A DNA stretch of 64,000 nt from Phaeosaccion multiseriatum (taxonomy: Eukaryota; Protista; Ochrophyta, other classes), in the NCBI GenBank assembly GCA_965112735.1, contig OZ218958.1:3563894-3627893 (forward strand), in the 5' to 3' direction. Shown piece after piece: positions 11,089 to 64,000 of the stretch (its first letter is position 1; the number at the start of each line of letters is the position of its first letter). A program made the position numbers and the translations under genes. The notes beneath the pieces were generated by a model. That model was not told where the DNA came from. It saw only the letters and a program-made list of their open reading frames with translations, and did not search any database.

Positions 11089-11183
11089 CATTATGATACG
11101 CTTGTACTGAATACTGAGTCGACCCACCCGACGAATGAAGATGGTGCGGTGCGTTTCACCCCCCCCCACATCCTCGCTGAGAT

Positions 11184-13317: not shown

Positions 13318-13352
13318 GCGTCACCAATGGGCGGTGTTGACGATGCTGACGC
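13318..13352. promoter_or_regulatory. Paired GCGTCA/TGACGC motifs with CCAAT and GC box upstream of LCIB copy 2
   Basis: GCGTCA 13318-23, then CCAAT and GGGCGG, then TGACGC 13347-52. Confidence 0.4.
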
Positions 13353-13410
13353 CATTATGATACAGCTTAGTACTGAGTCGACGAAGATGGCACCCCCCTC
13401 TAGGAGAGCC

Positions 13411-13860: not shown

Positions 13861-14083
13861 TGCAGGCATGGAGGGGAGAGCTGTTTACTTGATACAGTCC
13901 ATTGGTCTACAACATTAAAATTAAAACGTCCTACTCGCTCTATATGTATATAAATGACTCAACCCCTCCCCAAAAACTGCTGTACAATCCTTACAAGTGT
14001 CTTTGTCCGGCGGCGACTTGTCACCCCGGACTGGTTAGCGCACTCTAAAACACACGCGCACCCCCTCCCCCCTCCCATCCACT

Positions 14084-15495: not shown

Positions 15496-15793
15496 TGTCC
15501 GTTTAGTACAGCCGGTGTAGTAGCCAGAGCGTCGTTCGGGTGTGAAGGGTTTATGGTAGTAGCAGTAGTAGGGCGTTGAATTGTAGTGGCTGATTGAGGA
15601 GGAGTGAGGCAAGTCAGGATTGATGTTGATGATGTCAGGTGGGAGGGTGGAAGCGGGAGAGAGGAATAAAATAAAGCCATTGAATAAATAACCCGCCGCC
15701 AGGGGCCTCCACGGGGTCAAGCAGCAACTTCCAGACAGTTTCAGTTTCAGCGCGCTGTCCACTTTTCGCGCCGATTTTGCCAAAATCATCGAC

Positions 15794-18179
15794 CACATGC
15801 ACGCCGGCCGCTCGGCCGATCTGGGCCTAGGCCGGCGGCCTCTAGCCCGCCTCTAGTTAGACAGCCTTTAGGCAGCCACTAGACAGCCTCCGCCCCCCTG
15901 ACCGCGGCCGGCCGGCCGGCCCGCCCAGCCAGTGGTAGCAGCACAACTGTAGGCTAGGCATGCACTCCTCGCAGGGCAGCCAGGCGAGGCGGAAAGAGAC
16001 AACACGAACCCAGTCTACTCCTCAGTTCCAATCCCATATATTGGCTTGCTTAAAGTGACTACTATGTGCACTCTGGTGGGCACTCCCACCGTCCTCCCGG
16101 TCCTGCTGGCTGGCTGGCTGGAGGGAAGGTCGAGGCAACGAAGGTAGTACTCTCTTCCGCAGGTGCCCTCGTTGTGGCAGATAATGGTGTTGCTCGGGTT
16201 GGTACTCTGCGACAGATGTTGCTTGCAGAAGGTTTCCTTGGCAGCAGCCATTGACTTGGTTCTTGGCTTGGGCTGGCTGTTTAGTTCCTCCTTCCTCGCA
16301 AGTGCCTGGCTGGCTCGCTGGGCCTGTAGCTACCAGCGCTCGTACCGGTGCGGCATAGTTTTGACCCCTTCTTACCCGACCCTTCGAGCTGACTTCCCTA
16401 GGGAGGTGCGCGTGGTCCCCTCTGTCGCTACCCTCATCGCTACTCTCCCCTTCGTTACACTCCCTCCGCTCCCTGCCTCTAGCTACTGCCTCGCTCCCTC
16501 GCTCCCGTCCTCCGTCCTCACTGCTATCGCTCACGCCTTGACTTGCGCGTCCATTGCTTCTGCCCAGGTCTTGAGACAAGGCGCCGTCTTCACCTTCCTA
16601 TTGGCTGACGAGAGTGCTGTACTCTTCGAACTGCTCTGTCGAGATGCAAAAGCTCTCCAGCCATGGTTGTTGTCGGGCCCCCAGTGGCGTTGCTGTACAA
16701 GAAGGCCTGGAAACTGACCGCTGAAACGAGCTCAAAAGCATACTCAATGTTGCCATCGCCAGCGTCGCCTCCATCGTCAACTTTGCTCTCAGCCAACTTT
16801 GTCGAAGCCGCGAATCTGAGGCTTGTTGGGCTTGATGTACTTGCTTGCGCTGTTTCCTGCTTGGTGCGCCCCCCTCTCTTCCATGACACGTCAACACATG
16901 CTCCAACAAGAGCTCAGCAAGATAAAAAGGCTGATCAGCACCCTTCTCCGCCTTTGCTTACCACGTACACTTGATGGGCCCTGGGCTGAGCAAAAGCTTC
17001 TTCGATTGCTGCTTCCTCTGTGTAAGAGCACTGCCGGCCGAGCGGGCCTGGCTGGTTGCTTGCCTCTTCTTGCCTGCCCCCCCCCTTCCCTTGAGCATCC
17101 TCTGCTGCTTTCGCCTGCGCTGTTTGCTCCACGATGCATGGCGAGAGGGGCGGTGCCTTGCTGAAAACACCCATGTTCAGTGACTCTCTTCTGTTTGGCA
17201 GAGGCCTAACCCTAACCCTTCGCCACATCTCTCAGAGCTCTCAATTGCGTTATTCCCTCACTTCTCTACTCATTTGATAAAGTCGGCTTTGGAGAGCCCT
17301 TTCGTCTGCGGGCAGTATGTAGGACAACAGTTAGGAAGGGAAGGGTGTATTGTGAAGGTCCGAGTACAGTGAAGGGTGGACTCACCCACTCACTCACACA
17401 CACACACCCACTCACACACACACCCACTCACTCACTCACTCGCTGTCTCAATTACTCACTCACCTACTCACTCTCCCTCACTCACTCACTCACTCACTCA
17501 CTCACTCACTCACTCACTCTCCCACTTACTCACCCACTCAAATCACTCACTCACCCACTCACTCACCCACTCACTCCCTCTCCCACTCACTCACTACCTC
17601 ACTCCCTCTCCCACTCACTCACTGCCTCACTCCCTCCCCAACTCACTCACTACCTCCCTCCCTCCCCCTTTCACTCACTACCTCACTCCCTCGCCCGCTC
17701 ACTCACTTTCTCACTCACCCACTCACCCACTCACCCACTCACTCACTCACTCGCTCACTCACTCACTCACTCACTCACTCACTCACTCACTCACTCACTC
17801 ACTCACTCACTCACTCACTCACTCACTCACTCACTCACTCACTCACTCACTCACTCACTCACCTCCCAGCCACCCAAAGGAAGTGTACCCTCTCACTGAC
17901 CTTATGTACAGGGTTCCACGCCAGCGGCGACAGGGGCCTGGCTGCTTGCAGGTGTGGTAGCCTCTCCCATGCTGTCGGCTCTTCTGCGAGGCCGGATAGT
18001 CCCATGAGAGCGCTGAGCTCTCCTTCTTCGTCCGCTCACGGATCGACATTCCTCTTTTTTTCTCCATGTGCCTCAGAAGAGTGAGATGCCCGTCCTTCTC
18101 CCGGCCGCCCTACTAGGCGCCGGTAGGCGCCGGACAATTCTCCCAATAGGCCTTGGGCGCGAGGCTAGGCGTGCATGTG
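15794..18179 (-). mobile_element. Putative degenerate DNA-transposon-like insertion (2386 bp) with 12-bp terminal inverted repeats
   Basis: CACATGCACGCC at 15794-15805 and GGCGTGCATGTG at 18168-18179. Absent from the homologous spacer between copies 1 and 2 (ccaaaat..ggcagatggcttcaca). Contains broken ORF-like segments. No TSD recognised. Confidence 0.5.
17380..17862. repeat. (ACTC)n microsatellite-rich tract inside the insertion
   Basis: Seen directly. Confidence 0.9.
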
Positions 18180-29320: not shown

Positions 29321-29496
29321 CTGGAAGAAGGACAGAGAGCCAGAGAGTGGCCCGACTGGTCGCAGGGGAGGAAGAGGCACCAGCCGCGGGGGGCAGTTGC
29401 ACGTCCGACGGCGGGCAGCGTCGCAGTTCCTGCCTTCCTGCCTGGTGTGGCGGGGCCCTAAGTTAGGCGGTGGGGGCCGTGCAGAGACACAGAGAG

Positions 29497-29523
29497 CCTA
29501 ACCCTAATCCTAACCCTAACCCC
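29497..29523 (-). repeat. Interstitial telomeric repeat, ~4 CCCTAA units (one variant)
   Basis: CCTAACCCTAATCCTAACCCTAACCCC. Confidence 0.85.
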
Positions 29524-42145: not shown

Positions 42146-42201
<56 letters not shown>

Positions 42202-43022
42202 GTCTGTGTGTGTGGTGTCTCTGTGTGTGGTGTGTGTATGTGTGTGAGAGAGTGCCTCTCTGTGTGTGTGGTGTGTGTGAGTGTCTGTGTGTGTGTATGT
42301 ATATATGTATGTGTGTGTGTGTGTGGCGTTTGTGAGTGTCTGTGTGAGAGTCTGTGTGAGAGTCTGTGTGTGTGGTGTCTGTGAGAGTGTCTGTGTGAGT
42401 GTCTGTGTGTGTGGTGTGTGTGAGAGTGTCTGTGTGAGTATCTGTGTGTGAGAGTGTCTGTGTGAGTGTCTGTGTGTGTGGTGTGTGTGAGAGAGTCTGT
42501 GTGAGTATCTGTGTTTGAGAGTGTCTGTGTGAGTGTCTGTGTGTGAGAGTATCTGTGTGAGTGTCTGTGTGTGTGGTGTGTGTGAAAATGTCCGTGTGCA
42601 TGGTGTGTGTGAGAGTGTCTGCGTGAGTGTCCGTATGTGTGGGTGTGAGTGAGAGTGTCTGTGAGTGTCCTTGTGTGTGTGGTGTCTGTGAGAGTGTCTG
42701 TGTGTGTGAGTCTGTGTGTGTGTGTGTGTGGTGTGTGTGTGTGTGAGAGAGAGAGAGAGTGCCTCTCTGTGTGTGGTGTCTGTGTGAGTGTCTGTGTGAG
42801 TGTCCGTGTGTGTGGTGTGTGTGTGAGTGTGTATGTGTGTGTGTGTGTGTGAGTCTGTGTGTGCGTGTGGTGTTTGTGAGAGTGTCTGTGAGAGTGTCTG
42901 TGTGTGTGGTGTCTGTGTGTGTGGTGTGTGTGTGAGTGAGTGTGTGAGTGTCTGTGTGTGTGGTGTGTCTGTGTGTTGTGTGTGTGTGAGTGTCTGTGTG
43001 AGTGTCCGTGTGTGTGGTGTGT

Positions 43023-43059
<37 letters not shown>

Positions 43060-46857: not shown

Positions 46858-49800
46858 GGTAGCCAGTACAATGGTAAAGCAGGCTCTATATCAATGTACA
46901 TGAGAGGCACCGGCATTACTGGGAGACTATGTATTTTTGGTAGAGTGGTCTCGGTGTCCAGTGGGCCTGCTTGGTGTCGAAACTACCGACAGCTAGCCTC
47001 AAAGCCAAGCTAGAGCAAAGCAGAAGCTAAAGCAAGCACCCGGAAGCCAGCCCACACGCAGGCTGCGCTTCCTATTATTACTGATTTACCGTCTCGTTGG
47101 CCCGTTTTCCGGCCGTTACACTACTGATTGGGTCCCCAAGAGACCCCAACTAGGCCACTTCTAACATCCACCTCACTATACCCCCGCTTCTTCCTCCAGC
47201 TCCCTCAGAAGCCGAGATGCGAGCGATAGAATTGCGTCTCGTGCGCCAGCCCGCTGCCCCACTTCTCATGTTGCCGCAGGCGGATCGTACTTTCCCGTTG
47301 AGACCTATGCCCTCTTTTGACATTCACTCCTGGATCGAGGTCAATGTGCGGAAGAGCGTTTTCAAACGCCTCTATGGCCTTGGCGTGTCCCCGCTCCAGC
47401 AACCACTCAGCCCATTCCCAGGTCTGGAAAGTGCCTCCGTCCGCCACCGCCCACCGGTGGGTCATCTGGCGCCCGATCGCGACACGGGAGGGTTGAAGTG
47501 TGCTTTCTCTGGGCCAGTGGAGTTGAAATGGTCCCACCATGGTCGTCATGAGTCTACCGTGCGTCTCGGGTGTGCTCGGTGTGGTTGTACACTCTGTTCT
47601 ATGGGGTTGAAATGGCCCATCTGTGAGCCCCGGGGGGTCATTTGGCGCCCGATCGCGACACGGGAGGGTTGAAGTGTGCTTTCTCTGGGCCAGCGGGGTT
47701 GAAATGGTCCCACCACGGTCGTCATGAGTCTGCCGTGCGTCTCTGGTGTGCTCGGTGTGGTTGTACACTCTGTTCTATGGGGTTGAAATGGCCCATCTGT
47801 GAGCCCCGGTGGGTCATCTGGCGCCTGATTTCGACACGGGAGGGTTGAAGTGTGCTTTCTCTGGGCCAGTGGGGTTGAAACGGTCCCACCATGGTCGTCA
47901 TGAGTCTGCCATGCGTCTCTGGTGTGCTCGGTGTGATTGTACACTCTGTTCTGTGGGGTTGAAATGGCCCATCTGTGAGCCCCGGTGGGTCATCTGGCGC
48001 CTGATTTCGACACGGGAGGGTTGAAGAGTGCTTTCTCTGGGCCAGTGGTGTTGAAATGGTCCCACCATGGTCGTCATGAGTCTGCCGGGCGTCTCTGGTG
48101 TGCTCGGTGTGGTTGTACACTCTGTTCTGTGGGGTTGAAATGGCCCATCTGTGAGCCCCGGGGGGCCATCTGTCGCCCCATCGCGACACGGGAGGGTTGA
48201 AGAGTGCTTTCTCTGGGCCAGTGGTGGTGAAATGGTCCCACCATGGTCGTCATGAGTCGGCGGGCCGTTTCTGGGGTGCTCGGTGTGGTTGTACACTCTG
48301 TTCTGTGGGGTTGAAATGGCCCATCTGTGAGCCCCTGTGGGCCATCTGGCGCCTGATTTCGACACGGGAGGGTTGAAGTGTGCTTTCTCTGGGCCAGCGG
48401 GGTTGAAATGGTCCCACCATGGTCGTCACGAGTCAGCCGGGCGTCTCTGGTGTGCTCGGTGTGATTGTACACTCTGTTCTATGGGGTTGAAATGGCCCAT
48501 CTGTGAGCCCCGGTGGGTCATCTGGCGCCTGATTTCGACACGGGAGGGTTGAAGAGTGCTTTCTCTGGGCCAGTGGGGTTGAAATGGTCCCACCATGGTC
48601 GTCATGAGTCTGCCGGGCGTCTCTGGGGTGCTCGGTGTGGTTGTACACTCTGTTCTGTGGGGTTGAAATGGCCCATCTGTGAGCCCCGGGGGGTCATCTG
48701 GCGCCCGATCGCGGCACGGGAGGGTTGAAGTGTGCTTTCTCTGGGCCAGCGGGGTTGAAATGGTTCCACCATGGTCGTCATGAGTCTGCCGGGCGTCTCT
48801 GGTGTGCTCGGTGAGGTTGTACACTCTGTTCTATGGGGTTGAAATGGCCCATCTGTGAGCCCCGGTGGGTCATCTGGCGCCTGATTTTGTCACGGGAGGG
48901 TTGAAGTGTGCTTTCTCTGGGCCAGTGGGGGTGAAACGGTCCCACCATGGTCGTCATGAGTCGGCCGGGCGTCTCTGGTGTGCTCGGTGTGATTGTACAC
49001 TCTGTTCTGTGGGGTTGAAATGGCCCATCTGTGAGCCCCGGTGGGTCATCTGGCGCCTGATTTCGACACGGGAGGGTTGAAGTGAGCTTTCTCCGGGCCA
49101 GTGGGGTTGAAATGGTCCCACCATGGCCGTCATGAGTCCGCCGGGCGTCTCTGGGGTGCTCGGTGTGATTGTACACTCTATTCTGTGGGGTTGAAATGGC
49201 CCATCTGTGAGCCCCGGTGGGTCATCTGGCGCCTGATTTCGACACGGGAGGGTTGAAGTGTGCTATATCTGGGCCAGTGGTGTTGAAATGGTCCCACCAT
49301 GGTCGTCACGAGTCAGCCGGGCGTCTCTGGTGTGCTCGGTGTGATTGTACACTCTGTTCTATGGGGTTGAAATGGCCCATCTGTGAGCCCCGGTGGGTCA
49401 TCTGGCGCCTGACTTCGACACGGGAGGGTTGAAGTGGGCTTTCTCCGGGCCAGTGGGGTTGAAATGGTCCCACCATGGTCGTCATGAGTCTACCGGGCGT
49501 CTCTGGTGTGCTCGGTGTGATTGTACACTCTGTTCTGTGGGGTTGAAATGGCCCATCTGTGAGCCCCGGGGGGCCATCTGGCGCCCGATCGCGACACGGG
49601 AGGGTTGAAGTGTGCTTTCTCTGGGCCGGTGGGGTTGAAATGGTCCCACCATGGTCGTCATGAGTCGGCTGTGCGTCTCTGGTGTGCTCGGTGTGGTTGT
49701 ACACTCTGTTCTGTGGGGTTGAAATGGCCCATCTGTGAGCCCCGGTGGGTCATCTGGCGCCTGATTTCGACACGGGAGGGTTGAAGTGTGCTTTCTCTGG

Positions 49801-50632
49801 GCCGGTGGGGTTGAAATGGTCCCACCATGGTCGTCATGAGTCTGCCGGGCGTCTCTGGTGTGCTCGGTTTGATTGTACACTCTGTTCTGTGGGGTTGAAA
49901 TGGCCCATCTGTGAGCCCCGGGGGGTCATCTGGCGCCTGATTTCGACACGGGAGGGTTGAAGTGTGCTTTCTCTGGGCCAGTGGTGGTGAAATGGTCCCA
50001 CCATGGTCGTCATGAGTCCGCCGGGCGTCTCGGGTGTGCTCGGTGTGGTTGTACACTCTGTTCTGTGGGGTTGAAATGGCCCATCTGTGAGCCCCGGTGG
50101 GTCATCTGGCGCCTGATTTTAACACGGGAGGGTTGAAGTGTGCTTTCTCTGGGCCAGCGGGGTTGAAATGGTCCCACCATGGTCGTCATGAGTCTGCCGG
50201 GCGTCTCTGGTGTGCTCGGTGTGGTTGTACACTCTGTTCTATGGGGTTGAAATGGCCCATCTGTGAGCCCCGGTGGGTCATCTGGCGCCTGATTTCGACA
50301 CGGGAGGGTTGAAGTGTGCTTTCTCTGGGCCAGTGGTGGTGAAATGGTCCCACCATGGTCGTTATGAGTCTGCCGTGCGTCTCTGGTGTGCTCGGTGTGA
50401 TTGTACACTCTGTTCTGTGGGGTTGAAATGGCCCATCTGTGAGCCCCGGTGGGTCATCTGGCGCCTGATTTCGACACGGGAGGGTTGAACTGTGCTTTCT
50501 CTGGGCCAGTGGTGGTGAAATGGTCCCACCATGGTCGTCATGAGTCTGCCGGGCGTCTCTGGTGTGCTCGGTGTGATTGTACACTCTGTTCTGTGGGGTT
50601 GAAATGGCCCATCTGTGAGCCCCGGTGGGTCA

Positions 50633-50935
50633 TGTGGGGCCGCTACCTTCCTCTGCCTAAGAGTAAGAAGGTACCCCCAAGCTGAGCGCTGTGTTCCGGT
50701 CCCAATAGGGGGAGAAGATACCAATGCTAGCACCAAGTGTATTGATAATAAGGACTATCCCACCCTAAGACCCTGGACAGCCTCCTTGTTTAAAGGAGAG
50801 CTATCCACTTGGTCTATACGGGTTCAGGAGTGCGGAGGGGCCAACCAGGCCCTCAAAAAGGCCGCGTCCCACTCATTGACTTACTACTCTGCCTACCTAA
50901 TAATACGTAATTGAGCCTGTCCCACCTCCACCACA
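50633..50935. mobile_element. 303-bp solo-LTR-like insertion in the satellite (TGTGG...CCACA, GTCA target-site duplication)
   Basis: Starts TGTGG and ends CCACA. GTCA at 50629-32 and 50936-39; removing the insert restores an intact monomer. Confidence 0.75.
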
Positions 50936-53226
50936 GTCATCTGGCGCCTGATTTCGACACGGGAGGGTTGAAGTGTGCTTTCTCTGGGCCAGTGGGGTTG
51001 AAACGGTCCCACCATGGTCGTCATGAGTCCGCCAGGCGTCTCTAGTGTGCTCGGTGTGGTTGTACACTCTGTTCTGTGGGGTTGAAATGGCCCATCTGTG
51101 AGCCCCGGTGGGTCATCTGGCGCCTGATTTTGTCACGGGAGGGTTGAAGTGTGCTTTCTCTGGGCCAGTGGGGGTGAAACGGTCCCATCATGGTCGTCAT
51201 GAGTCGGCTGGGCGTCTCTGGTGTGCTCGGTGTGATTGTACACTCAGTTCTGTGGGGTTGAAATGGCCCATCTGTGAGCCCCGGTGGGTCATTTGGCGCC
51301 TGATTTCGACACGGGAGGGTTGAAGTGTGCTTTCTCTGGGCCAGCGGGGGTGAAATGGTCCCACCATGGTCGTCACGAGTCTGCCATGCGTCTCTGGTGT
51401 GCTCGGTGTGGTTGTACACTCTGTTCTGTGGGGTTGAAATGGCCCATCTGTGAGCCCCGGTGGGTCATCTGGCGCCTGACTTCGACACGGGAGGGTTGAA
51501 GTGTGCTTTCTCTGGGCCAGCGGGGTTGAGATGGTCCCACCATGGTCGTCATGAGTCGGCCGGGCGTCTCTGGTGTGCTCGGTGTGGTTGTACACTCTGT
51601 TCTGTGGGGTTGAAATGGCCCATCTGTGAGCCCCGGTGGGTCATCTGGCGCCTGATTTGTCACGGGAGGGTTGAAGTGTGCTTTCTCTGGGCCAGTGGGG
51701 GTGAAACGGTCCCACCATGGTCGTCATGAGTCTGCTGTGCGTCTCTGGTGTGCTCGGTGTGATTGTACACTCAGTTCTGTGGGGTTGAAATGGCCCATCT
51801 GTGAGCCCCGGTGGGTCATTTGGCGCCTGATTTCGACACGGGAGGGTTGAAGTGTTCTTTCTCTGGGCCAGAGGGGTTGAAATGGTCCCACCATGGTCGT
51901 CATGCGTCTGCTGTGCGTCTCTGGTGTGCTCGGTGAGGTTGTACACTCTGTTCTGTGGGGTTGAAATGGCCCATCTGTGAGCCCCGGTGGGTCATCTGGC
52001 GCCTGATTTCGACACGGGAGGGTTGAAGTGGGCTTTCTCCGGGCCAGTGGGGTTGAAATGGTCCCACCATGGTCGTCATGAGTCTACCGGGCGTCTCTGG
52101 TGTGCTCGGTGTGATTGTACACTCTGTTCTGTGGGGTTGAAATGGCCCATCTGTGAGCCCCGGGGGGCCATCTGGCGCCCGATCGCGACACGGGAGGGTT
52201 GAAGTGTGCTTTCTCTGGGCCGGTGGGGTTGAAATGGTCCCACCATGGTCGTCATGAGTCTGCTGTGCGTCTCTGGTGTGCTCGGTGTGGTTGTACACTC
52301 TGTTCTGTGGGGTTGAAATGGCCCATCTGTGAGCCCCGGTGGGTCATCTGGCGCCTGATTTCGACACGGGAGGGTTGAAGTGTGCTTTCTCTGGGCCGGT
52401 GGGGTTGAAATGGTCCCACCATGGTCGTCATGAGTCTGCCGGGCGTCTCTGGTGTGCTCGGTGTGATTGTACACTCTGTTCTGTGGGGTTGAAATGGCCC
52501 ATCTGTGAGCCCCGGGGGGTCATCTGGCGCCTGATTTCGACACGGGAGGGTTGAAGTGTGCTTTCTCTGGGCCAGTGGTGGTGAAATGGTCCCACCATGG
52601 TCGTCATGAGTCCGCCGGGCGTCTCGGGTGTGCTCGGTGTGGTTGTACACTCTGTTCTGTGGGGTTGAAATGGCCCATCTGTGAGCCCCGGTGGGTCATC
52701 TGGCGCCTGATTTTAACACGGGAGGGTTGAAGTGTGCTTTCTCTGGGCCAGCGGGGTTGAAATGGTCCCACCATGGTCGTCATGAGTCTGCCGGGCGTCT
52801 CTGGTGTGCTCGGTGTGGTTGTACACTCTGTTCTATGGGGTTGAAATGGCCCATCTGTGAGCCCCGGTGGGTCATCTGGCGCCTGATTTCGACACGGGAG
52901 GGTTGAAGTGTGCTTTCTCTGGGCCAGTGGTGGTGAAATGGTCCCACCATGGTCGTTATGAGTCTGCCGTGCGTCTCTGGTGTGCTCGGTGTGATTGTAC
53001 ACTCTGTTCTGTGGGGTTGAAATGGCCCATCTGTGAGCCCCGGTGGGTCATCTGGCGCCTGATTTCGACACGGGAGGGTTGAACTGTGCTTTCTCTGGGC
53101 CAGTGGTGGTGAAATGGTCCCACCATGGTCGTCATGAGTCTGCCGGGCGTCTCTGGTGTGCTCGGTGTGATTGTACACTCTGTTCTGTGGGGTTGAAATG
53201 GCCCATCTGTGAGCCCCGGTGGGTCA

Positions 53227-53529
53227 TGTGGGGCCGCTACCTTCCTCTGCCTAAGAGTAAGAAGGTACCCCCAAGCTGAGCGCTGTGTTCCGGTCCCAAT
53301 AGGGGGAGAAGATACCAATGCTAGCACCAAGTGTATTGATAATAAGGACTATCCCACCCTAAGACCCTGGACAGCCTCCTTGTTTAAAGGAGAGCTATCC
53401 ACTTGGTCTATACGGGTTCAGGAGTGCGGAGGGGCCAACCAGGCCCTCAAAAAGGCCGCGTCCCACTCATTGACTTACTACTCTGCCTACCTAATAATAC
53501 GTAATTGAGCCTGTCCCACCTCCACCACA
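53227..53529. mobile_element. Second, apparently identical copy of the solo-LTR-like insertion, created by segmental duplication
   Basis: Same sequence, TSD and flanks, offset by 2594 bp. Confidence 0.75.
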
Positions 53530-55760
53530 GTCATCTGGCGCCTGATTTCGACACGGGAGGGTTGAAGTGTGCTTTCTCTGGGCCAGTGGGGTTGAAACGG
53601 TCCCACCATGGTCGTCATGAGTCCGCCAGGCGTCTCTAGTGTGCTCGGTGTGGTTGTACACTCTGTTCTGTGGGGTTGAAATGGCCCATCTGTGAGCCCC
53701 GGTGGGTCATCTGGCGCCTGATTTTGTCACGGGAGGGTTGAAGTGTGCTTTCTCTGGGCCAGTGGGGGTGAAACGGTCCCATCATGGTCGTCATGAGTCG
53801 GCTGGGCGTCTCTGGTGTGCTCGGTGTGATTGTACACTCAGTTCTGTGGGGTTGAAATGGCCCATCTGTGAGCCCCGGTGGGTCATTTGGCGCCTGATTT
53901 CGACACGGGAGGGTTGAAGTGTGCTTTCTCTGGGCCAGCGGGGGTGAAATGGTCCCACCATGGTCGTCACGAGTCTGCCATGCGTCTCTGGTGTGCTCGG
54001 TGTGGTTGTACACTCTGTTCTGTGGGGTTGAAATGGCCCATCTGTGAGCCCCGGTGGGTCATCTGGCGCCTGACTTCGACACGGGAGGGTTGAAGTGTGC
54101 TTTCTCTGGGCCAGCGGGGTTGAGATGGTCCCACCATGGTCGTCATGAGTCGGCCGGGCGTCTCTGGTGTGCTCGGTGTGATTGTACACTCTGTTCTGTG
54201 GGGTTGAAATGGCCCATCTGTGAGCCCCGGTGGGTCATCTGGCGCCTGATTTGTCACGGGAGGGTTGAAGTGTGCTTTCTCTGGGCCAGTGGGGGTGAAA
54301 CGGTCCCACCATGGTCGTCATGAGTCGGCTGGGCGTCTCTGGTGTGCTCGGTGTGATTGTACACTCAGTTCTGTGGGGTTGAAATGGCCCATCTGTGAGC
54401 CCCGGTGGGTCATTTGGCGCCTGATTTCGACACGGGAGGGTTGAAGTGTTCTTTCTCTGGGCCAGTGGGGTTGAAATGGTCCCACCATGGTCGTCATGCG
54501 TCTGCTGTGCGTCTCTGGTGTGCTCGGTGAGGTTGTACACTCTGTTCTGTGGGGTTGAAATGGCCCATCTGTGAGCCCCGGTGGGCCATCTGGCGCCTGA
54601 TTTCGACACGGGAGGGTTGAAGTGTGCTTTATCTGGGCCAGTCGGGTTGAAATGATCCCACCATAGTCGTCCTGAATATGCCGGGCGTCTCTGGGGTGCT
54701 CGGTGTGGTTGTACACTCTGTTCTGTGGTGTTGAAATGGCCCATCTGTGAGCCCCGGGGGGTCATCTGGCGCCTGATTTCGACACGGGAGGGTTGAACTG
54801 TGCTTTCTCTGGGCCAGTGGGGGTGAAATGATCCCACCATGGTCGTTATGAGTCTGCCGTGCGTCTCTAGTGTGCTCGGTGTGATTGTACACTCTGTTCT
54901 GTGGGGTTGAAATGGCCCATCTGTGAGCCCCGGTGGGTCATCTGCCGCCTGATTTTGACACGGGAGGGTTGAAGTGTGCTTTCTCTGGGCCAGTGGGGGT
55001 GAAACGGTCCCACCATGGTCGTCATGAGTCGGCTGGGCGTCTCTGGTGTGCTCGGTGTGATTGTACACTCTGTTCTGTGGGGTTGAAATGGCCCATCTGT
55101 GAGCCCCGGTGGGTCATCTGGCGCCTGATTTCGACACGGGAGGGTTGAAGTGAGCTTTCTCCGGGCCAGTGGGGGTGAAATGGTCCCACCATGGCCGTCA
55201 TGAGTCCGCCGGGCGTCTCTGGGGTGCTCGGTATGATTGTACACTCTATTCTGTGGGGTTGAAATGGCCCATCTGTGAGCCCCGGTGGGTCATCTGGCGC
55301 CTGATTTCGACACGGGAGGGTTGAACTGTGCTATATCTGGGCCAAGTGGTGTTGAAATGGTCCCACCATGGTCGTCACGAGTCAGCCGAACGTCTCTGGT
55401 GTGCTCGGTGTGATTGTACACTCTGTTCTATGGGGTTGAAATGGCCCATCTGTGAGCCCCGGTGGGTCATCTGGCGCCTGATTTCGACACGGGAGGGTTG
55501 AAGTGGGCTTTCTCCGGGCCAGTGGGGTTGAAATGGTCCCACCATGGTCGTCATGAGTCTACCGGGCGTCTCTGGTGTGCTCGGTGTGATTGTACACTCT
55601 GTTCTGTGGGGTTGAAATGGCCCATCTGTGAGCCCCGGGGGGCCATCTGGCGCCCGATCGCGACACGGGAGGGTTGAAGTGTGCTTTCTCTGGGCCGGTG
55701 GGGTTGAAATGGTCCCACCATGGTCGTCATGAGTCTGCTGTGCGTCTCTGGTGTGCTCGG

Positions 55761-55772
55761 TTAGGGTTAGGG
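55761..55772 (+). repeat. (TTAGGG)2 at the satellite-telomere junction
   Basis: ctcgg|TTAGGGTTAGGG|ccagg. Confidence 0.9.
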
Positions 55773-58700
55773 CCAGGCCAGGGCCAGGCCAGGCCAGGCC
55801 AGGCCAGGCCAGGCCAGGCCAGGCCAGGCCAGGCCAGGCCAGGCCAGGCCAGGCCAGGCCAGGCCAGGCCAGGCCAGGCCAGGCCAGGCCAGGCCAGGCC
55901 AGGCCAGGCCAGGCCAGGCCAGGCCAGGCCAGGCCAGGCCAGGCCAGGCCAGGCCAGGCCAGGCCAGGCCAGGCCAGGCCAGGCCAGGCCAGGCCAGGCC
56001 AGGCCAGGCCAGGCCAGGCCAGGCCAGGCCAGGCCAGGCCAGGCCAGGCCAGGCCAGGCCAGGCCAGGCCAGGCCAGGCCAGGCCAGGCCAGGCCAGGCC
56101 AGGCCAGGCCAGGCCAGGCCAGGCCAGGCCAGGCCAGGCCAGGCCAGGCCAGGCCAGGCCAGGCCAGGCCAGGCCAGGCCAGGCCAGGCCAGGCCAGGCC
56201 AGGCCAGGCCAGGCCAGGCCAGGCCAGGCCAGGCCAGGCCAGGCCAGGCCAGGCCAGGCCAGGCCAGGCCAGGCCAGGCCAGGCCAGGCCAGGCCAGGCC
56301 AGGCCAGGCCAGGCCAGGCCAGGCCAGGCCAGGCCAGGCCAGGCCAGGCCAGGCCAGGCCAGGCCAGGCCAGGCCAGGCCAGGCCAGGCCAGGCCAGGCC
56401 AGGCCAGGCCAGGCCAGGCCAGGCCAGGCCAGGCCAGGCCAGGCCAGGCCAGGCCAGGCCAGGCCAGGCCAGGCCAGGCCAGGCCAGGCCAGGCCAGGCC
56501 AGGCCAGGCCAGGCCAGGCCAGGCCAGGCCAGGCCAGGCCAGGCCAGGCCAGGCCAGGCCAGGCCAGGCCAGGCCAGGCCAGGCCAGGCCAGGCCAGGCC
56601 AGGCCAGGCCAGGCCAGGCCAGGCCAGGCCAGGCCAGGCCAGGCCAGGCCAGGCCAGGCCAGGCCAGGCCAGGCCAGGCCAGGCCAGGCCAGGCCAGGCC
56701 AGGCCAGGCCAGGCCAGGCCAGGCCAGGCCAGGCCAGGCCAGGCCAGGCCAGGCCAGGCCAGGCCAGGCCAGGCCAGGCCAGGCCAGGCCAGGCCAGGCC
56801 AGGCCAGGCCAGGCCAGGCCAGGCCAGGCCAGGCCAGGCCAGGCCAGGCCAGGCCAGGCCAGGCCAGGCCAGGCCAGGCCAGGCCAGGCCAGGCCAGGCC
56901 AGGCCAGGCCAGGCCAGGCCAGGCCAGGCCAGGCCAGGCCAGGCCAGGCCAGGCCAGGCCAGGCCAGGCCAGGCCAGGCCAGGCCAGGCCAGGCCAGGCC
57001 AGGCCAGGCCAGGCCAGGCCAGGCCAGGCCAGGCCAGGCCAGGCCAGGCCAGGCCAGGCCAGGCCAGGCCAGGCCAGGCCAGGCCAGGCCAGGCCAGGCC
57101 AGGCCAGGCCAGGCCAGGCCAGGCCAGGCCAGGCCAGGCCAGGCCAGGCCAGGCCAGGCCAGGCCAGGCCAGGCCAGGCCAGGCCAGGCCAGGCCAGGCC
57201 AGGCCAGGCCAGGCCAGGCCAGGCCAGGCCAGGCCAGGCCAGGCCAGGCCAGGCCAGGCCAGGCCAGGCCAGGCCAGGCCAGGCCAGGCCAGGCCAGGCC
57301 AGGCCAGGCCAGGCCAGGCCAGGCCAGGCCAGGCCAGGCCAGGCCAGGCCAGGCCAGGCCAGGCCAGGCCAGGCCAGGCCAGGCCAGGCCAGGCCAGGCC
57401 AGGCCAGGCCAGGCCAGGCCAGGCCAGGCCAGGCCAGGCCAGGCCAGGCCAGGCCAGGCCAGGCCAGGCCAGGCCAGGCCAGGCCAGGCCAGGCCAGGCC
57501 AGGCCAGGCCAGGCCAGGCCAGGCCAGGCCAGGCCAGGCCAGGCCAGGCCAGGCCAGGCCAGGCCAGGCCAGGCCAGGCCAGGCCAGGCCAGGCCAGGCC
57601 AGGCCAGGCCAGGCCAGGCCAGGCCAGGCCAGGCCAGGCCAGGCCAGGCCAGGCCAGGCCAGGCCAGGCCAGGCCAGGCCAGGCCAGGCCAGGCCAGGCC
57701 AGGCCAGGCCAGGCCAGGCCAGGCCAGGCCAGGCCAGGCCAGGCCAGGCCAGGCCAGGCCAGGCCAGGCCAGGCCAGGCCAGGCCAGGCCAGGCCAGGCC
57801 AGGCCAGGCCAGGCCAGGCCAGGCCAGGCCAGGCCAGGCCAGGCCAGGCCAGGCCAGGCCAGGCCAGGCCAGGCCAGGCCAGGCCAGGCCAGGCCAGGCC
57901 AGGCCAGGCCAGGCCAGGCCAGGCCAGGCCAGGCCAGGCCAGGCCAGGCCAGGCCAGGCCAGGCCAGGCCAGGCCAGGCCAGGCCAGGCCAGGCCAGGCC
58001 AGGCCAGGCCAGGCCAGGCCAGGCCAGGCCAGGCCAGGCCAGGCCAGGCCAGGCCAGGCCAGGCCAGGCCAGGCCAGGCCAGGCCAGGCCAGGCCAGGCC
58101 AGGCCAGGCCAGGCCAGGCCAGGCCAGGCCAGGCCAGGCCAGGCCAGGCCAGGCCAGGCCAGGCCAGGCCAGGCCAGGCCAGGCCAGGCCAGGCCAGGCC
58201 AGGCCAGGCCAGGCCAGGCCAGGCCAGGCCAGGCCAGGCCAGGCCAGGCCAGGCCAGGCCAGGCCAGGCCAGGCCAGGCCAGGCCAGGCCAGGCCAGGCC
58301 AGGCCAGGCCAGGCCAGGCCAGGCCAGGCCAGGCCAGGCCAGGCCAGGCCAGGCCAGGCCAGGCCAGGCCAGGCCAGGCCAGGCCAGGCCAGGCCAGGCC
58401 AGGCCAGGCCAGGCCAGGCCAGGCCAGGCCAGGCCAGGCCAGGCCAGGCCAGGCCAGGCCAGGCCAGGCCAGGCCAGGCCAGGCCAGGCCAGGCCAGGCC
58501 AGGCCAGGCCAGGCCAGGCCAGGCCAGGCCAGGCCAGGCCAGGCCAGGCCAGGCCAGGCCAGGCCAGGCCAGGCCAGGCCAGGCCAGGCCAGGCCAGGCC
58601 AGGCCAGGCCAGGCCAGGCCAGGCCAGGCCAGGCCAGGCCAGGCCAGGCCAGGCCAGGCCAGGCCAGGCCAGGCCAGGCCAGGCCAGGCCAGGCCAGGCC

Positions 58701-61700
58701 AGGCCAGGCCAGGCCAGGCCAGGCCAGGCCAGGCCAGGCCAGGCCAGGCCAGGCCAGGCCAGGCCAGGCCAGGCCAGGCCAGGCCAGGCCAGGCCAGGCC
58801 AGGCCAGGCCAGGCCAGGCCAGGCCAGGCCAGGCCAGGCCAGGCCAGGCCAGGCCAGGCCAGGCCAGGCCAGGCCAGGCCAGGCCAGGCCAGGCCAGGCC
58901 AGGCCAGGCCAGGCCAGGCCAGGCCAGGCCAGGCCAGGCCAGGCCAGGCCAGGCCAGGCCAGGCCAGGCCAGGCCAGGCCAGGCCAGGCCAGGCCAGGCC
59001 AGGCCAGGCCAGGCCAGGCCAGGCCAGGCCAGGCCAGGCCAGGCCAGGCCAGGCCAGGCCAGGCCAGGCCAGGCCAGGCCAGGCCAGGCCAGGCCAGGCC
59101 AGGCCAGGCCAGGCCAGGCCAGGCCAGGCCAGGCCAGGCCAGGCCAGGCCAGGCCAGGCCAGGCCAGGCCAGGCCAGGCCAGGCCAGGCCAGGCCAGGCC
59201 AGGCCAGGCCAGGCCAGGCCAGGCCAGGCCAGGCCAGGCCAGGCCAGGCCAGGCCAGGCCAGGCCAGGCCAGGCCAGGCCAGGCCAGGCCAGGCCAGGCC
59301 AGGCCAGGCCAGGCCAGGCCAGGCCAGGCCAGGCCAGGCCAGGCCAGGCCAGGCCAGGCCAGGCCAGGCCAGGCCAGGCCAGGCCAGGCCAGGCCAGGCC
59401 AGGCCAGGCCAGGCCAGGCCAGGCCAGGCCAGGCCAGGCCAGGCCAGGCCAGGCCAGGCCAGGCCAGGCCAGGCCAGGCCAGGCCAGGCCAGGCCAGGCC
59501 AGGCCAGGCCAGGCCAGGCCAGGCCAGGCCAGGCCAGGCCAGGCCAGGCCAGGCCAGGCCAGGCCAGGCCAGGCCAGGCCAGGCCAGGCCAGGCCAGGCC
59601 AGGCCAGGCCAGGCCAGGCCAGGCCAGGCCAGGCCAGGCCAGGCCAGGCCAGGCCAGGCCAGGCCAGGCCAGGCCAGGCCAGGCCAGGCCAGGCCAGGCC
59701 AGGCCAGGCCAGGCCAGGCCAGGCCAGGCCAGGCCAGGCCAGGCCAGGCCAGGCCAGGCCAGGCCAGGCCAGGCCAGGCCAGGCCAGGCCAGGCCAGGCC
59801 AGGCCAGGCCAGGCCAGGCCAGGCCAGGCCAGGCCAGGCCAGGCCAGGCCAGGCCAGGCCAGGCCAGGCCAGGCCAGGCCAGGCCAGGCCAGGCCAGGCC
59901 AGGCCAGGCCAGGCCAGGCCAGGCCAGGCCAGGCCAGGCCAGGCCAGGCCAGGCCAGGCCAGGCCAGGCCAGGCCAGGCCAGGCCAGGCCAGGCCAGGCC
60001 AGGCCAGGCCAGGCCAGGCCAGGCCAGGCCAGGCCAGGCCAGGCCAGGCCAGGCCAGGCCAGGCCAGGCCAGGCCAGGCCAGGCCAGGCCAGGCCAGGCC
60101 AGGCCAGGCCAGGCCAGGCCAGGCCAGGCCAGGCCAGGCCAGGCCAGGCCAGGCCAGGCCAGGCCAGGCCAGGCCAGGCCAGGCCAGGCCAGGCCAGGCC
60201 AGGCCAGGCCAGGCCAGGCCAGGCCAGGCCAGGCCAGGCCAGGCCAGGCCAGGCCAGGCCAGGCCAGGCCAGGCCAGGCCAGGCCAGGCCAGGCCAGGCC
60301 AGGCCAGGCCAGGCCAGGCCAGGCCAGGCCAGGCCAGGCCAGGCCAGGCCAGGCCAGGCCAGGCCAGGCCAGGCCAGGCCAGGCCAGGCCAGGCCAGGCC
60401 AGGCCAGGCCAGGCCAGGCCAGGCCAGGCCAGGCCAGGCCAGGCCAGGCCAGGCCAGGCCAGGCCAGGCCAGGCCAGGCCAGGCCAGGCCAGGCCAGGCC
60501 AGGCCAGGCCAGGCCAGGCCAGGCCAGGCCAGGCCAGGCCAGGCCAGGCCAGGCCAGGCCAGGCCAGGCCAGGCCAGGCCAGGCCAGGCCAGGCCAGGCC
60601 AGGCCAGGCCAGGCCAGGCCAGGCCAGGCCAGGCCAGGCCAGGCCAGGCCAGGCCAGGCCAGGCCAGGCCAGGCCAGGCCAGGCCAGGCCAGGCCAGGCC
60701 AGGCCAGGCCAGGCCAGGCCAGGCCAGGCCAGGCCAGGCCAGGCCAGGCCAGGCCAGGCCAGGCCAGGCCAGGCCAGGCCAGGCCAGGCCAGGCCAGGCC
60801 AGGCCAGGCCAGGCCAGGCCAGGCCAGGCCAGGCCAGGCCAGGCCAGGCCAGGCCAGGCCAGGCCAGGCCAGGCCAGGCCAGGCCAGGCCAGGCCAGGCC
60901 AGGCCAGGCCAGGCCAGGCCAGGCCAGGCCAGGCCAGGCCAGGCCAGGCCAGGCCAGGCCAGGCCAGGCCAGGCCAGGCCAGGCCAGGCCAGGCCAGGCC
61001 AGGCCAGGCCAGGCCAGGCCAGGCCAGGCCAGGCCAGGCCAGGCCAGGCCAGGCCAGGCCAGGCCAGGCCAGGCCAGGCCAGGCCAGGCCAGGCCAGGCC
61101 AGGCCAGGCCAGGCCAGGCCAGGCCAGGCCAGGCCAGGCCAGGCCAGGCCAGGCCAGGCCAGGCCAGGCCAGGCCAGGCCAGGCCAGGCCAGGCCAGGCC
61201 AGGCCAGGCCAGGCCAGGCCAGGCCAGGCCAGGCCAGGCCAGGCCAGGCCAGGCCAGGCCAGGCCAGGCCAGGCCAGGCCAGGCCAGGCCAGGCCAGGCC
61301 AGGCCAGGCCAGGCCAGGCCAGGCCAGGCCAGGCCAGGCCAGGCCAGGCCAGGCCAGGCCAGGCCAGGCCAGGCCAGGCCAGGCCAGGCCAGGCCAGGCC
61401 AGGCCAGGCCAGGCCAGGCCAGGCCAGGCCAGGCCAGGCCAGGCCAGGCCAGGCCAGGCCAGGCCAGGCCAGGCCAGGCCAGGCCAGGCCAGGCCAGGCC
61501 AGGCCAGGCCAGGCCAGGCCAGGCCAGGCCAGGCCAGGCCAGGCCAGGCCAGGCCAGGCCAGGCCAGGCCAGGCCAGGCCAGGCCAGGCCAGGCCAGGCC
61601 AGGCCAGGCCAGGCCAGGCCAGGCCAGGCCAGGCCAGGCCAGGCCAGGCCAGGCCAGGCCAGGCCAGGCCAGGCCAGGCCAGGCCAGGCCAGGCCAGGCC

Positions 61701-63964
61701 AGGCCAGGCCAGGCCAGGCCAGGCCAGGCCAGGCCAGGCCAGGCCAGGCCAGGCCAGGCCAGGCCAGGCCAGGCCAGGCCAGGCCAGGCCAGGCCAGGCC
61801 AGGCCAGGCCAGGCCAGGCCAGGCCAGGCCAGGCCAGGCCAGGCCAGGCCAGGCCAGGCCAGGCCAGGCCAGGCCAGGCCAGGCCAGGCCAGGCCAGGCC
61901 AGGCCAGGCCAGGCCAGGCCAGGCCAGGCCAGGCCAGGCCAGGCCAGGCCAGGCCAGGCCAGGCCAGGCCAGGCCAGGCCAGGCCAGGCCAGGCCAGGCC
62001 AGGCCAGGCCAGGCCAGGCCAGGCCAGGCCAGGCCAGGCCAGGCCAGGCCAGGCCAGGCCAGGCCAGGCCAGGCCAGGCCAGGCCAGGCCAGGCCAGGCC
62101 AGGCCAGGCCAGGCCAGGCCAGGCCAGGCCAGGCCAGGCCAGGCCAGGCCAGGCCAGGCCAGGCCAGGCCAGGCCAGGCCAGGCCAGGCCAGGCCAGGCC
62201 AGGCCAGGCCAGGCCAGGCCAGGCCAGGCCAGGCCAGGCCAGGCCAGGCCAGGCCAGGCCAGGCCAGGCCAGGCCAGGCCAGGCCAGGCCAGGCCAGGCC
62301 AGGCCAGGCCAGGCCAGGCCAGGCCAGGCCAGGCCAGGCCAGGCCAGGCCAGGCCAGGCCAGGCCAGGCCAGGCCAGGCCAGGCCAGGCCAGGCCAGGCC
62401 AGGCCAGGCCAGGCCAGGCCAGGCCAGGCCAGGCCAGGCCAGGCCAGGCCAGGCCAGGCCAGGCCAGGCCAGGCCAGGCCAGGCCAGGCCAGGCCAGGCC
62501 AGGCCAGGCCAGGCCAGGCCAGGCCAGGCCAGGCCAGGCCAGGCCAGGCCAGGCCAGGCCAGGCCAGGCCAGGCCAGGCCAGGCCAGGCCAGGCCAGGCC
62601 AGGCCAGGCCAGGCCAGGCCAGGCCAGGCCAGGCCAGGCCAGGCCAGGCCAGGCCAGGCCAGGCCAGGCCAGGCCAGGCCAGGCCAGGCCAGGCCAGGCC
62701 AGGCCAGGCCAGGCCAGGCCAGGCCAGGCCAGGCCAGGCCAGGCCAGGCCAGGCCAGGCCAGGCCAGGCCAGGCCAGGCCAGGCCAGGCCAGGCCAGGCC
62801 AGGCCAGGCCAGGCCAGGCCAGGCCAGGCCAGGCCAGGCCAGGCCAGGCCAGGCCAGGCCAGGCCAGGCCAGGCCAGGCCAGGCCAGGCCAGGCCAGGCC
62901 AGGCCAGGCCAGGCCAGGCCAGGCCAGGCCAGGCCAGGCCAGGCCAGGCCAGGCCAGGCCAGGCCAGGCCAGGCCAGGCCAGGCCAGGCCAGGCCAGGCC
63001 AGGCCAGGCCAGGCCAGGCCAGGCCAGGCCAGGCCAGGCCAGGCCAGGCCAGGCCAGGCCAGGCCAGGCCAGGCCAGGCCAGGCCAGGCCAGGCCAGGCC
63101 AGGCCAGGCCAGGCCAGGCCAGGCCAGGCCAGGCCAGGCCAGGCCAGGCCAGGCCAGGCCAGGCCAGGCCAGGCCAGGCCAGGCCAGGCCAGGCCAGGCC
63201 AGGCCAGGCCAGGCCAGGCCAGGCCAGGCCAGGCCAGGCCAGGCCAGGCCAGGCCAGGCCAGGCCAGGCCAGGCCAGGCCAGGCCAGGCCAGGCCAGGCC
63301 AGGCCAGGCCAGGCCAGGCCAGGCCAGGCCAGGCCAGGCCAGGCCAGGCCAGGCCAGGCCAGGCCAGGCCAGGCCAGGCCAGGCCAGGCCAGGCCAGGCC
63401 AGGCCAGGCCAGGCCAGGCCAGGCCAGGCCAGGCCAGGCCAGGCCAGGCCAGGCCAGGCCAGGCCAGGCCAGGCCAGGCCAGGCCAGGCCAGGCCAGGCC
63501 AGGCCAGGCCAGGCCAGGCCAGGCCAGGCCAGGCCAGCCCAGGCCAGGCCAGGCCAGGCCAGGCCAGGCCAGGCCAGGCCAGGCCAGGCCAGGCCAGGCC
63601 AGGCCAGGCCAGGCCAGGCCAGGCCAGGCCAGGCCAGGCCAGGCCAGGCCAGGCCAGGCCAGGCCAGGCCAGGCCAGGCCAGGGCCAGGCCAGGCCAGGC
63701 CAGGCCAGGCCAGGCCAGGCCAGGCCAGGCCAGGCCAGGCCAGGCCAGGCCAGGCCAGGCCAGGCCAGGCCAGGCCAGGCCAGGCCAGGCCAGGCCAGGC
63801 CAGGCCAGGCCAGGCCAGGCCAGGCCAGCCCAGGCCAGGGCCAGGCCAGGCCCAGGCCAGGCCAGCCAGGCCAGGCCAGGCCAGCCCAGGCCAGCCAGGC
63901 CAGGCCAGGGCCAGGCCAGGCCAGGCCAGGCCAGGCCAGGCCAGGCCAGGCCAGGCCAGGCCAG
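55773..63964 (+). repeat. ~8.2-kb (CCAGG)n array in telomeric position (possible miscalled TTAGGG)
   Basis: Near-perfect pentamer array. CCAGGG/CCAG/CCAGC variants occur only near its two ends. Confidence 0.9.
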
Positions 63965-64000
63965 TTAGGGTTAGGGTTAGGGTTAGGGTTAGGGTTAGGG
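63965..64000 (+). repeat. Terminal telomeric repeat (TTAGGG)6
   Basis: G-rich strand runs 5'->3' to the end of the sequence. Confidence 0.95.

What the first reader, a model, noticed from the sequence alone, without database searches (positions are those of the whole stretch)
55761..64000. Compound telomere: ~1640 CCAGG pentamers between canonical TTAGGG repeats
Seen: the chromosome end reads (TTAGGG)2-(CCAGG)n-(TTAGGG)6, in register through the shared AGG core, with occasional CCAGGG hexamers at the transitions. If real, this is a telomere whose bulk is a pentamer I do not know as a telomeric motif. That would imply a second telomerase template or recombinational amplification capped by TTAGGG. 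Known: nanopore basecallers can miscall (CCCTAA)n as (CCCTGG)n, which is CCAGGG on this strand, and CCWGG is also the Dcm methylation motif. Inference: an artefact is the more likely explanation, given the edge hexamers, the extreme homogeneity and interstitial CCCTAA (not CCTGG) tracts at 17206 and 29497.
Basis: partly seen in the sequence, partly recalled or inferred. Interest (0 to 1): 0.75.

Follow-up and report, generated by a model that had tools for sequence, protein, structure and literature searches.

The report
Miscalled telomere at a chromosome end
The 8.2 kb of CCAGG repeats at this chromosome end is almost certainly an ordinary TTAGGG telomere that a nanopore basecaller misread on its C-rich strand and the assembler kept, not a new kind of telomere.

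Summary
After a 176-bp subtelomeric satellite the window reads (TTAGGG)2, then about 1638 CCAGG units (55773-63964), then (TTAGGG)6 at the last base. Within the array, 1550 units (7,750 bp) are uninterrupted and perfect.

On the C-rich strand the unit is CCTGG.
- Tan et al. 2022 showed that nanopore basecallers turn (CCCTAA)n into (CCCTGG)n, on that strand only. They also showed that CCC-containing hexamer repeats contract to pentamers.
- Karimian et al. filter Guppy telomere reads with a period-5 CCTGG string, which is this motif.

The array's anatomy fits a miscall:
- Canonical units survive only next to non-repeat sequence.
- CCAGGG intermediates sit at the transitions.
- All noise lies in the distal 430 bp.
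- There is no G/C strand bias.
- No CCAGG dimer occurs elsewhere in the window.
- The break in the satellite is joined to TTAGGG through a GGT overlap.

Unchecked notes from this scan report the same 7-8 kb array at two other ends of this genome.

I could not do the direct test. Read laying masked the repeat, and the sequencing platform is not on record.

Confidence in the artefact is about 0.9. Interest is low, apart from the need to correct the assembly.

The parts
47454..55760 (+). Subtelomeric satellite with a 176-bp unit (352-bp higher order) that runs up to the telomere junction
   Evidence: TRF gives period 176/352 and 83-94% matches. Logan contigs of runs X2-X4 cover it at high depth.
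55761..55772 (+). Two canonical TTAGGG units joined to a broken satellite unit through a shared GGT. This is the telomere addition site.
   Evidence: intact satellite units read GCTCGGT then GTGATTG (55579-55592), while the junction reads GCTCGGT then TAGGGTTAGGG (55755-55772). One search confirms the units.
55773..63964 (+). About 1638 CCAGG units (CCTGG on the C-rich strand). Read here as miscalled TTAGGG/CCCTAA telomere.
   Evidence: Composition is C 3280, G 3274, A 1638, T 0, and GC skew is 0.00.
55784..63533 (+). Perfectly uniform core of the array: 1550 units, 7,750 bp, no variant
63534..63964 (+). Noisy distal 430 bp. It holds every array variant except the CCAGGG at 55778: three G-to-C changes (read as CCAG followed by CCCAGG), three CCAGGG, one lone CCCAGG and two lone CCAG.
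   Evidence: phase shifts at 63685, 63841, 63852, 63866, 63895, 63911
63965..64000 (+). Six canonical TTAGGG units at the very end of the window and contig
17204..17221 (+). Short interstitial telomere-like tract of the CCCTAA type
29496..29523 (+). Interstitial telomere-like tract of the CCCTAA type, four units with one variant

Best explanation
The chromosome ends in an ordinary telomerase-made (TTAGGG)n telomere. If one pentamer stands for one hexamer, it is roughly 1,650 units, or about 9.9 kb.

Proposed mechanism (inferred, not shown):
1. Nanopore reads of the C-rich strand start at the chromosome tip and run inward.
2. The basecaller called the first few CCCTAA units correctly, where adapter or read-start context was still in view.
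3. It then locked into a repeat-calling error that renders CCCTAA as CCTGG (AA called as GG, CCC shortened to CC).
4. It recovered only two units before the unique subtelomeric satellite.
5. The assembler took this version of the end as the contig path. Polishing made it uniform, because correct TTAGGG reads (long or short) cannot align to a CCAGG array to fix it.

Shown here: the sequence anatomy, and its identity with published error motifs.
Inferred: that the reads were nanopore, that the error sits on one read strand, and the true telomere length.
For: 1. Motif identity.
- Tan et al. 2022 (PMC9414165) report strand-specific miscalling of (CCCTAA)n as (CCCTGG)n. It was absent from HiFi reads of the same sample, was seen in other TTAGGG organisms, and 69.5% of C-strand reads were more than 90% erroneous.
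- The same paper documents (CCCTCA)n called as (CCTCA)n and (CCCTGA)n called as (CCTGA)n, so hexamers do contract to pentamers.
- Karimian et al. (PMC10769321) list CCTGG as a C-strand Guppy error pattern and select telomere reads with a 15-base period-5 CCTGG string.
- Topsicle (PMC12455769) cites CCCTAAA miscalled as CCTGGG in Arabidopsis. This is the same rule: drop one C, and A becomes G.

2. Position of the correct units. Canonical units survive only beside non-repeat context: 2 at the satellite and 6 at the tip. Tan et al. note that error repeats co-occur with true repeats at read ends.

3. Intermediates. CCAGGG hexamers, the published form of the error, sit at or near both transitions.

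4. Where the noise lies. The proximal 7.75 kb is flawless and every variant but one lies in the distal 430 bp. Real telomeres are degenerate proximally. A contig tip covered by few reads is noisy distally.

5. No strand bias. C 3280 against G 3274, skew 0.00. The single strand folds into a perfect hairpin, -45.5 kcal/mol per 100 nt, z = -8.3. That is unlike any G-rich telomerase product.

6. Telomere addition site. The satellite is broken at GCTCGGT and continues as TAGGGTTAGGG. This looks like healing by a TTAGGG-templating telomerase.

7. Rest of the window. No (CCAGG)2 or (CCTGG)2 occurs anywhere in the other 55.7 kb, while interstitial telomere-like tracts are of the CCCTAA type.

8. Other chromosome ends. 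Unchecked scan notes report 7.3-kb and 7.8-kb terminal (CCTGG)n arrays on two other pieces, one with six CCCTAA units. The orientation flips with the chromosome end, so the feature is systematic.

9. Metagenome scan. A scan of JGI metagenome contigs for the TTAGGG-to-CCAGG junction found only two interstitial degenerate tracts, each with two CCAGG units. It found no array.
Against: - The sequencing platform of the assembly is not on record, so nanopore origin is inferred.
- The direct test failed. Read laying masked 55758-55840 as a repeat and dropped the loose ends there, so zero depth over the array says nothing.
- The runs date from 2024. On human DNA, R10 chemistry shows few such errors, so the artefact needs R9/Guppy-era data or a model that fails on this organism.
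- A true telomere of about 10 kb would be long for a unicellular alga. This rests on my own knowledge and was not tested.
- A 7.75-kb stretch without one variant requires very consistent miscalling plus polishing.
Confidence: 0.9

Rival explanations
1. The array is real DNA: a (CCAGG)n tract that makes up the bulk of the telomere. It would be made by a second or mutated telomerase template, or amplified by recombination (ALT-like), and then capped by a short TTAGGG tract.
For: - It is terminal, in register with TTAGGG, and flanked by canonical repeats on both sides.
- Scan notes report it at three or more chromosome ends with similar lengths.
- No read-level evidence against it could be obtained.
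Against: - The motif and its orientation coincide exactly with a published technical error.
- There is no G/C strand asymmetry, and the strand is self-complementary.
- A 36-bp canonical cap is too short to bind shelterin-type proteins. This is established knowledge and was not tested here.
- Telomerase would have to add two TTAGGG units at the healing site, then switch template for about 1640 units, then switch back.
- Variants are distal rather than proximal.
- No interstitial CCAGG tandem occurs in the window.
- The metagenome scan found no such array.
Confidence: 0.05
2. The array is a real subtelomeric pentamer microsatellite, unrelated to telomerase. It would lie between an old interstitial telomere remnant, (TTAGGG)2, and the true telomere, of which only six units were assembled.
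For: - The window is rich in long microsatellites, for example a 1.8-kb TG tract at 41769-43599 and ACTC tracts, so expansions do occur in this genome.
Against: - Those microsatellites are imperfect (62-84% matches), whereas this one is 99-100% uniform.
- Reads long enough to cross 8 kb of array would also have carried a full-length telomere beyond it, yet only 36 bp is present.
- A chance satellite would not be expected to match the miscall motif, register and strand.
- The same array at other ends would need parallel expansions.
Confidence: 0.03
3. It is a technical artefact of another kind, not C-strand basecalling. Examples would be a polishing or consensus error, or a chimeric contig end.
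For: - Other first-reader notes describe fold-back contig ends in this assembly. That hints at long-read artefacts in general.
Against: - No known polishing or consensus process creates a uniform pentamer from a hexamer.
- The exact match to the basecaller error motif makes a separate cause unnecessary.
Confidence: 0.02

Closest known systems
Nanopore repeat-calling errors at telomeres (Tan et al. 2022, Genome Biol 23:180; PMC9414165)
   Same: C-strand CCCTAA rendered with TGG in place of TAA. Error repeats co-occur with true repeats at read ends. The errors are seen on all chromosome arms and in other TTAGGG organisms. Hexamer-to-pentamer contraction of CCC-containing repeats is documented.
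   Different: The paper names the hexamer (CCCTGG)n. Here the bulk is the pentamer, and the hexamer appears only at the transitions. Here the error is also fixed in an assembled contig rather than seen in individual reads.
TeloNP / read filter of Karimian et al. (PMC10769321)
   Same: Lists CCTGG as a Guppy C-strand error pattern and uses a period-5 CCTGG string to recognise telomeric reads. That is this exact motif.
   Different: Those are human telomere-enriched reads, and the paper makes no statement about assemblies or algae.
CCAGG 'telomere motif' in the Apis cerana koreana ONT-hybrid assembly (PMC12289884)
   Same: A long-read assembly in which seven chromosome ends carry CCAGG/CCTGG arrays where the expected TTAGG/CCTAA is absent. 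It is the same AA-to-GG substitution on the C strand.
   Different: The authors treat it as biological. The native unit there is already a pentamer. I did not test that data set, so calling it an artefact is my inference.
CCTGGG 'derivative telomere repeats' in Chenopodium nanopore reads (PMC10521516) and CCCTAAA called as CCTGGG in Arabidopsis (PMC12455769)
   Same: The same rule applied to the plant heptamer: one C lost and A read as G.
   Different: A different native repeat. The Chenopodium authors report FISH signal for CCTGGG at pericentromeric sites, so some such arrays may be real there.

Membership tests
Nanopore C-strand telomere repeat-calling artefact | The error motif is CCCTAA with AA read as GG (CCCTGG, or contracted CCTGG) on the C-rich strand | tested here: met
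   The array is CCAGG on the G-strand orientation, which is CCTGG on the C strand. CCAGGG occurs at the transitions. The motifs are documented.
Nanopore C-strand telomere repeat-calling artefact | It co-occurs with canonical repeats at a chromosome or read end, in telomere orientation | tested here: met
   (TTAGGG)2 lies proximal and (TTAGGG)6 lies at the contig tip. Scan notes report mirror-image CCTGG arrays at other ends (those were not checked).
Nanopore C-strand telomere repeat-calling artefact | It is confined to reads of one strand | not testable with these tools
   Only Logan contigs were available, and they carry no strand or read information.
Nanopore C-strand telomere repeat-calling artefact | It is absent from Illumina or HiFi reads of the same sample | tested here: inconclusive
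   Read laying masked 55758-55840 and dropped the loose ends there. Run libraries are not on record.
Nanopore C-strand telomere repeat-calling artefact | The assembly was built from nanopore reads | not testable with these tools
   The platform is not on record. There is one weak hint: runs X2-X4 give 4-7.5 million Logan contigs averaging about 50 nt, as noisy long reads would.
Telomerase-synthesised telomere repeat | G-rich 3' strand and C-rich 5' strand | tested here: not met
   C 3280 against G 3274 and GC skew 0.00. The strand is self-complementary and folds as a hairpin.
Telomerase-synthesised telomere repeat | Variant repeats are proximal and the distal part is homogeneous | tested here: not met
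   The proximal 7.75 kb is perfect. All variants but one lie in the distal 430 bp.
Telomerase-synthesised telomere repeat | The same unit is added at healing sites and found in interstitial telomere-like tracts | tested here: not met
   The healing junction and the interstitial tracts carry TTAGGG/CCCTAA. There is no tandem CCAGG outside the array.
Telomerase-synthesised telomere repeat | The tract is terminal and BAL31-sensitive in genomic DNA | not testable with these tools
   This needs bench work.

The most novel reading that the evidence does not exclude
The alga really carries 7-8 kb of (CCAGG)n between short TTAGGG tracts at several chromosome ends. That would be a strand-symmetric, hairpin-prone telomere bulk maintained by template switching or recombination.
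Probability: 0.05. Interest if true: 0.85.

Novelty: not a real feature. Interest (0 to 1): 0.1.

Why it matters
As biology it does not matter much. The chromosome most likely ends in a normal TTAGGG telomere healed onto a subtelomeric satellite.

It matters for data quality:
- At least three chromosome ends of a public assembly appear to carry kilobases of sequence that do not exist in the cell.
- Telomere-finding scripts that look for TTAGGG would score these ends as nearly telomere-less.
- The stop-free array can also spawn false ORFs.
- Similar arrays have been described as biological motifs in at least one published assembly. A clear statement of the signature helps others recognise it: a CCTGG pentamer, canonical units only at the edges, zero GC skew and distal noise.

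If the array were real against these odds, it would be the first strand-symmetric telomere repeat.

Tried and rejected
- **Read-level test.**
  - The look-up of sequencing runs found five 2024 runs of one organism in two studies.
  - The second request, with fewer copies as the tool advised, ran, but it masked 55758-55840 and dropped four loose ends. The junction therefore could not be read.
  - Run X1, from the other study, has no contig at 55725-55774.
- **Metagenome scan for the 22-base junction.** It gave two hits. Both are short interstitial degenerate telomere-like tracts, so they neither support nor refute. I take neither contig for human.
- **Naming the organism and the platform.**
  - Pfam confirms only LCIB carbonic anhydrase and a uDENN domain.
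  - The Atlas and PDB searches gave no lineage.
  - Rfam found nothing.
  - An exact-protein look-up found nothing.
  - A paper search for LCIB plus T2T plus nanopore found nothing.
  - The pelagophyte and Ectocarpus genome papers do not match this genome: six chromosomes of 4-6 Mb, and a 98-bp TTAGGG-bearing satellite.
- **Searches not run.** I did not run the large protein searches on the array's translation. A five-residue repeat is a poor query, and hits might have led to human contigs.
- **Dcm methylation idea.** Rejected, because it applies to E. coli and not to a eukaryotic alga.
Full report
**What is there**

- A 176-bp satellite (352-bp higher order) fills 47454-55760.
- 55761-55772 is (TTAGGG)2.
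- 55773-63964 is a period-5 array of about 1638 units: 1624 perfect CCAGG, 4 CCAGGG, 4 CCCAGG and 5 CCAG.
- 63965-64000 is (TTAGGG)6, ending on the last base of the window.
- The window end is probably the contig end, because the neighbouring window of the scan is offset by 29,893 rather than a round step.
- One stretch, 55784-63533, is 1550 perfect units without a single variant.
- Shuffles give no such repeats.

**Anatomy that bears on the cause**

1. Read on the C-rich strand, the unit is CCTGG.
2. The array differs from the canonical repeat by TT to CC on this strand (AA to GG on the C strand) plus the loss of one G (one C).
3. The full-length intermediate CCAGGG occurs four times: once as the second unit of the array, and three times within 290 bp of the distal transition.
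4. Canonical units survive only where non-repeat sequence is close: two next to the satellite and six at the tip.
5. The proximal 7.75 kb is flawless, and every variant but one is in the last 430 bp. Real telomeres are degenerate at the proximal side and uniform distally. A contig tip supported by few reads is noisy distally.
6. Composition is C 3280, G 3274, A 1638, T 0, and GC skew is 0.00. There is therefore no G-rich strand.
7. Each strand is self-complementary apart from an A-A mismatch and folds into a perfect hairpin (-45.5 kcal/mol per 100 nt, z = -8.3).
8. The satellite unit is broken at GCTCGGT, where intact units continue GTGATTG. Here it continues TAGGGTTAGGG, so GGT is shared with the telomere repeat. 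That is the footprint of telomerase healing with a TTAGGG template.
9. The other 55.7 kb hold no tandem dimer of CCAGG or CCTGG. The two interstitial telomere-like tracts (17204-17221, 29496-29523) are of the CCCTAA type.

**What is known**

- Tan et al. 2022 (PMC9414165) showed the following.
  - Nanopore basecallers (Guppy and Bonito, several models) miscall telomeres in a strand-specific way. (TTAGGG)n becomes (TTAAAA)n, and (CCCTAA)n becomes (CTTCTT)n or (CCCTGG)n.
  - The errors are absent from HiFi reads of the same sample. They occur on all chromosome arms, co-occur with true repeats at read ends, and are seen in other TTAGGG organisms.
  - 69.5% of C-strand reads are more than 90% erroneous.
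  - (CCCTCA)n is called as (CCTCA)n and (CCCTGA)n as (CCTGA)n, so CCC-containing hexamers contract to pentamers.
- Karimian et al. (PMC10769321) list CCTGG as a C-strand Guppy error pattern. They pick out telomeric reads with a 15-base period-5 CCTGG string, which is exactly the motif here.
- Topsicle (PMC12455769) cites CCCTAAA miscalled as CCTGGG in Arabidopsis. That is the same rule applied to a heptamer.
- An ONT-hybrid assembly of Apis cerana reports CCAGG arrays at seven ends where TTAGG is missing (PMC12289884). I suspect the same cause but did not test it.
- On human DNA the error is said to be minimal with R10 chemistry, though Dorado 0.7 still produces telomeric artefacts.

**Other ends of this genome**

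Unchecked first-reader notes of this scan describe a 7.3-kb terminal (CCTGG)n array and a 7.8-kb (CCTGG)n array next to six CCCTAA units on two other pieces. The scan has therefore met this feature before, on other DNA of the same genome.

The orientation flips with the chromosome end, as both a telomere and a C-strand artefact would. Other ends are described as healed directly at TAGGGT-like seeds. Follow-up agents call the organism a stramenopile alga. I did not test that. TTAGGG is the telomere repeat reported for brown algae and used to find telomeres in pelagophytes.

**The direct test, and why it failed**

- The look-up of sequencing runs found five 2024 runs of one organism in two studies.
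- On the shorter stretch that the tool advised, it masked 55758-55840 and dropped four loose ends.
- Contigs of X2-X4 reach the 55750-55774 bin. The zero depth beyond that is a product of the mask, not evidence.
- X1, the only run from another study, has nothing at 55725-55774.
- Library types are not on record. X2-X4 yield 4-7.5 million contigs averaging about 50 nt, which is what noisy long reads would give. That is only a weak hint.

**An attempt to falsify the artefact reading**

A scan of JGI metagenome contigs for the 22-base TTAGGG-to-CCAGG junction gave two hits. Both are short interstitial degenerate telomere-like tracts with just two CCAGG units and then other sequence. No orthogonal data set shows a compound telomere.

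**Verdict**

The most likely account is an ordinary (TTAGGG)n telomere, about 9.9 kb if one pentamer stands for one hexamer. TARPON warns that miscalled stretches may not keep their length. The telomere's C-strand nanopore reads were miscalled as (CCTGG)n, except for the units nearest the read start and the subtelomere. The assembler kept that version, and polishing made it uniform because correct reads cannot align to it.

I put this at 0.9. A real CCAGG array, telomeric or satellite, keeps about 0.08 in total. It would need an exact coincidence with a published error motif, register and strand. It would also need a telomerase that switches template twice and a strand-symmetric repeat with a 36-bp canonical cap. 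The remaining doubt comes from the unknown platform and the failed read test.

**Novelty and interest**

This is not a real feature of the genome. It is of low scientific interest, but it is worth flagging to the assembly's users, and the affected ends should be re-basecalled or trimmed.

Noticed in passing
window 47454-55760: Subtelomeric satellite with a 176-bp unit and a 352-bp higher-order period. The inner part (47454-50641) is 94% uniform and the outer part (50936-55761) is 84% uniform. It is very abundant in runs X2-X4, and a related strain or run (X1) holds only fragments of it.
   Followed up: partly
window 55755-55772: The telomere is joined to a broken satellite unit through a shared GGT, which looks like a de novo telomere addition (healing) site. 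Scan notes mention other ends healed at TAGGGT-like seeds inside retrotransposon genes.
   Followed up: partly
window 9335-16579, minus strand: Tandem LCIB/theta-carbonic-anhydrase genes. Pfam LCIB_C_CA hits on ORFs at 9335-10378, 11598-12074 and 14084-14560. The closest solved structures are the LCIB entry 5k5w and LCIC (5b5x), with diatom PtLCIB4 further off.
   Followed up: partly
window 41769-43599: A 1.8-kb imperfect TG dinucleotide tract (about 936 copies, 72% matches) that gives the 40-44 kb bin a GC skew of +0.40. Long spurious ORFs run over it on both strands.
   Followed up: no
window 38988-41570, plus strand: An 860-aa ATG ORF with no Pfam family and no exact copy on record in the public gene collection.
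   Followed up: no
L002 240-520 and 680-740 (JGI metagenome contig Ga0115005_10063807): A GC-rich eukaryote-like contig in which ordinary-looking GC-rich sequence is interrupted by short blocks of degenerate telomere-like repeats (TTAGGG, TCAGGG, TTGGGG, CTAGGG) that start with GT and end with AG. They may be introns built from telomere-like repeats. The window tract at 29496-29523 and scan notes on telomere-like tracts in introns of this genome look similar.
   Followed up: no
PMC12289884 (Apis cerana koreana assembly): That paper describes CCAGG arrays at seven chromosome ends, where TTAGG is absent, as a telomere motif. The pattern matches the nanopore C-strand error (CCTAA read as CCTGG) and deserves the same read-level check.
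   Followed up: no
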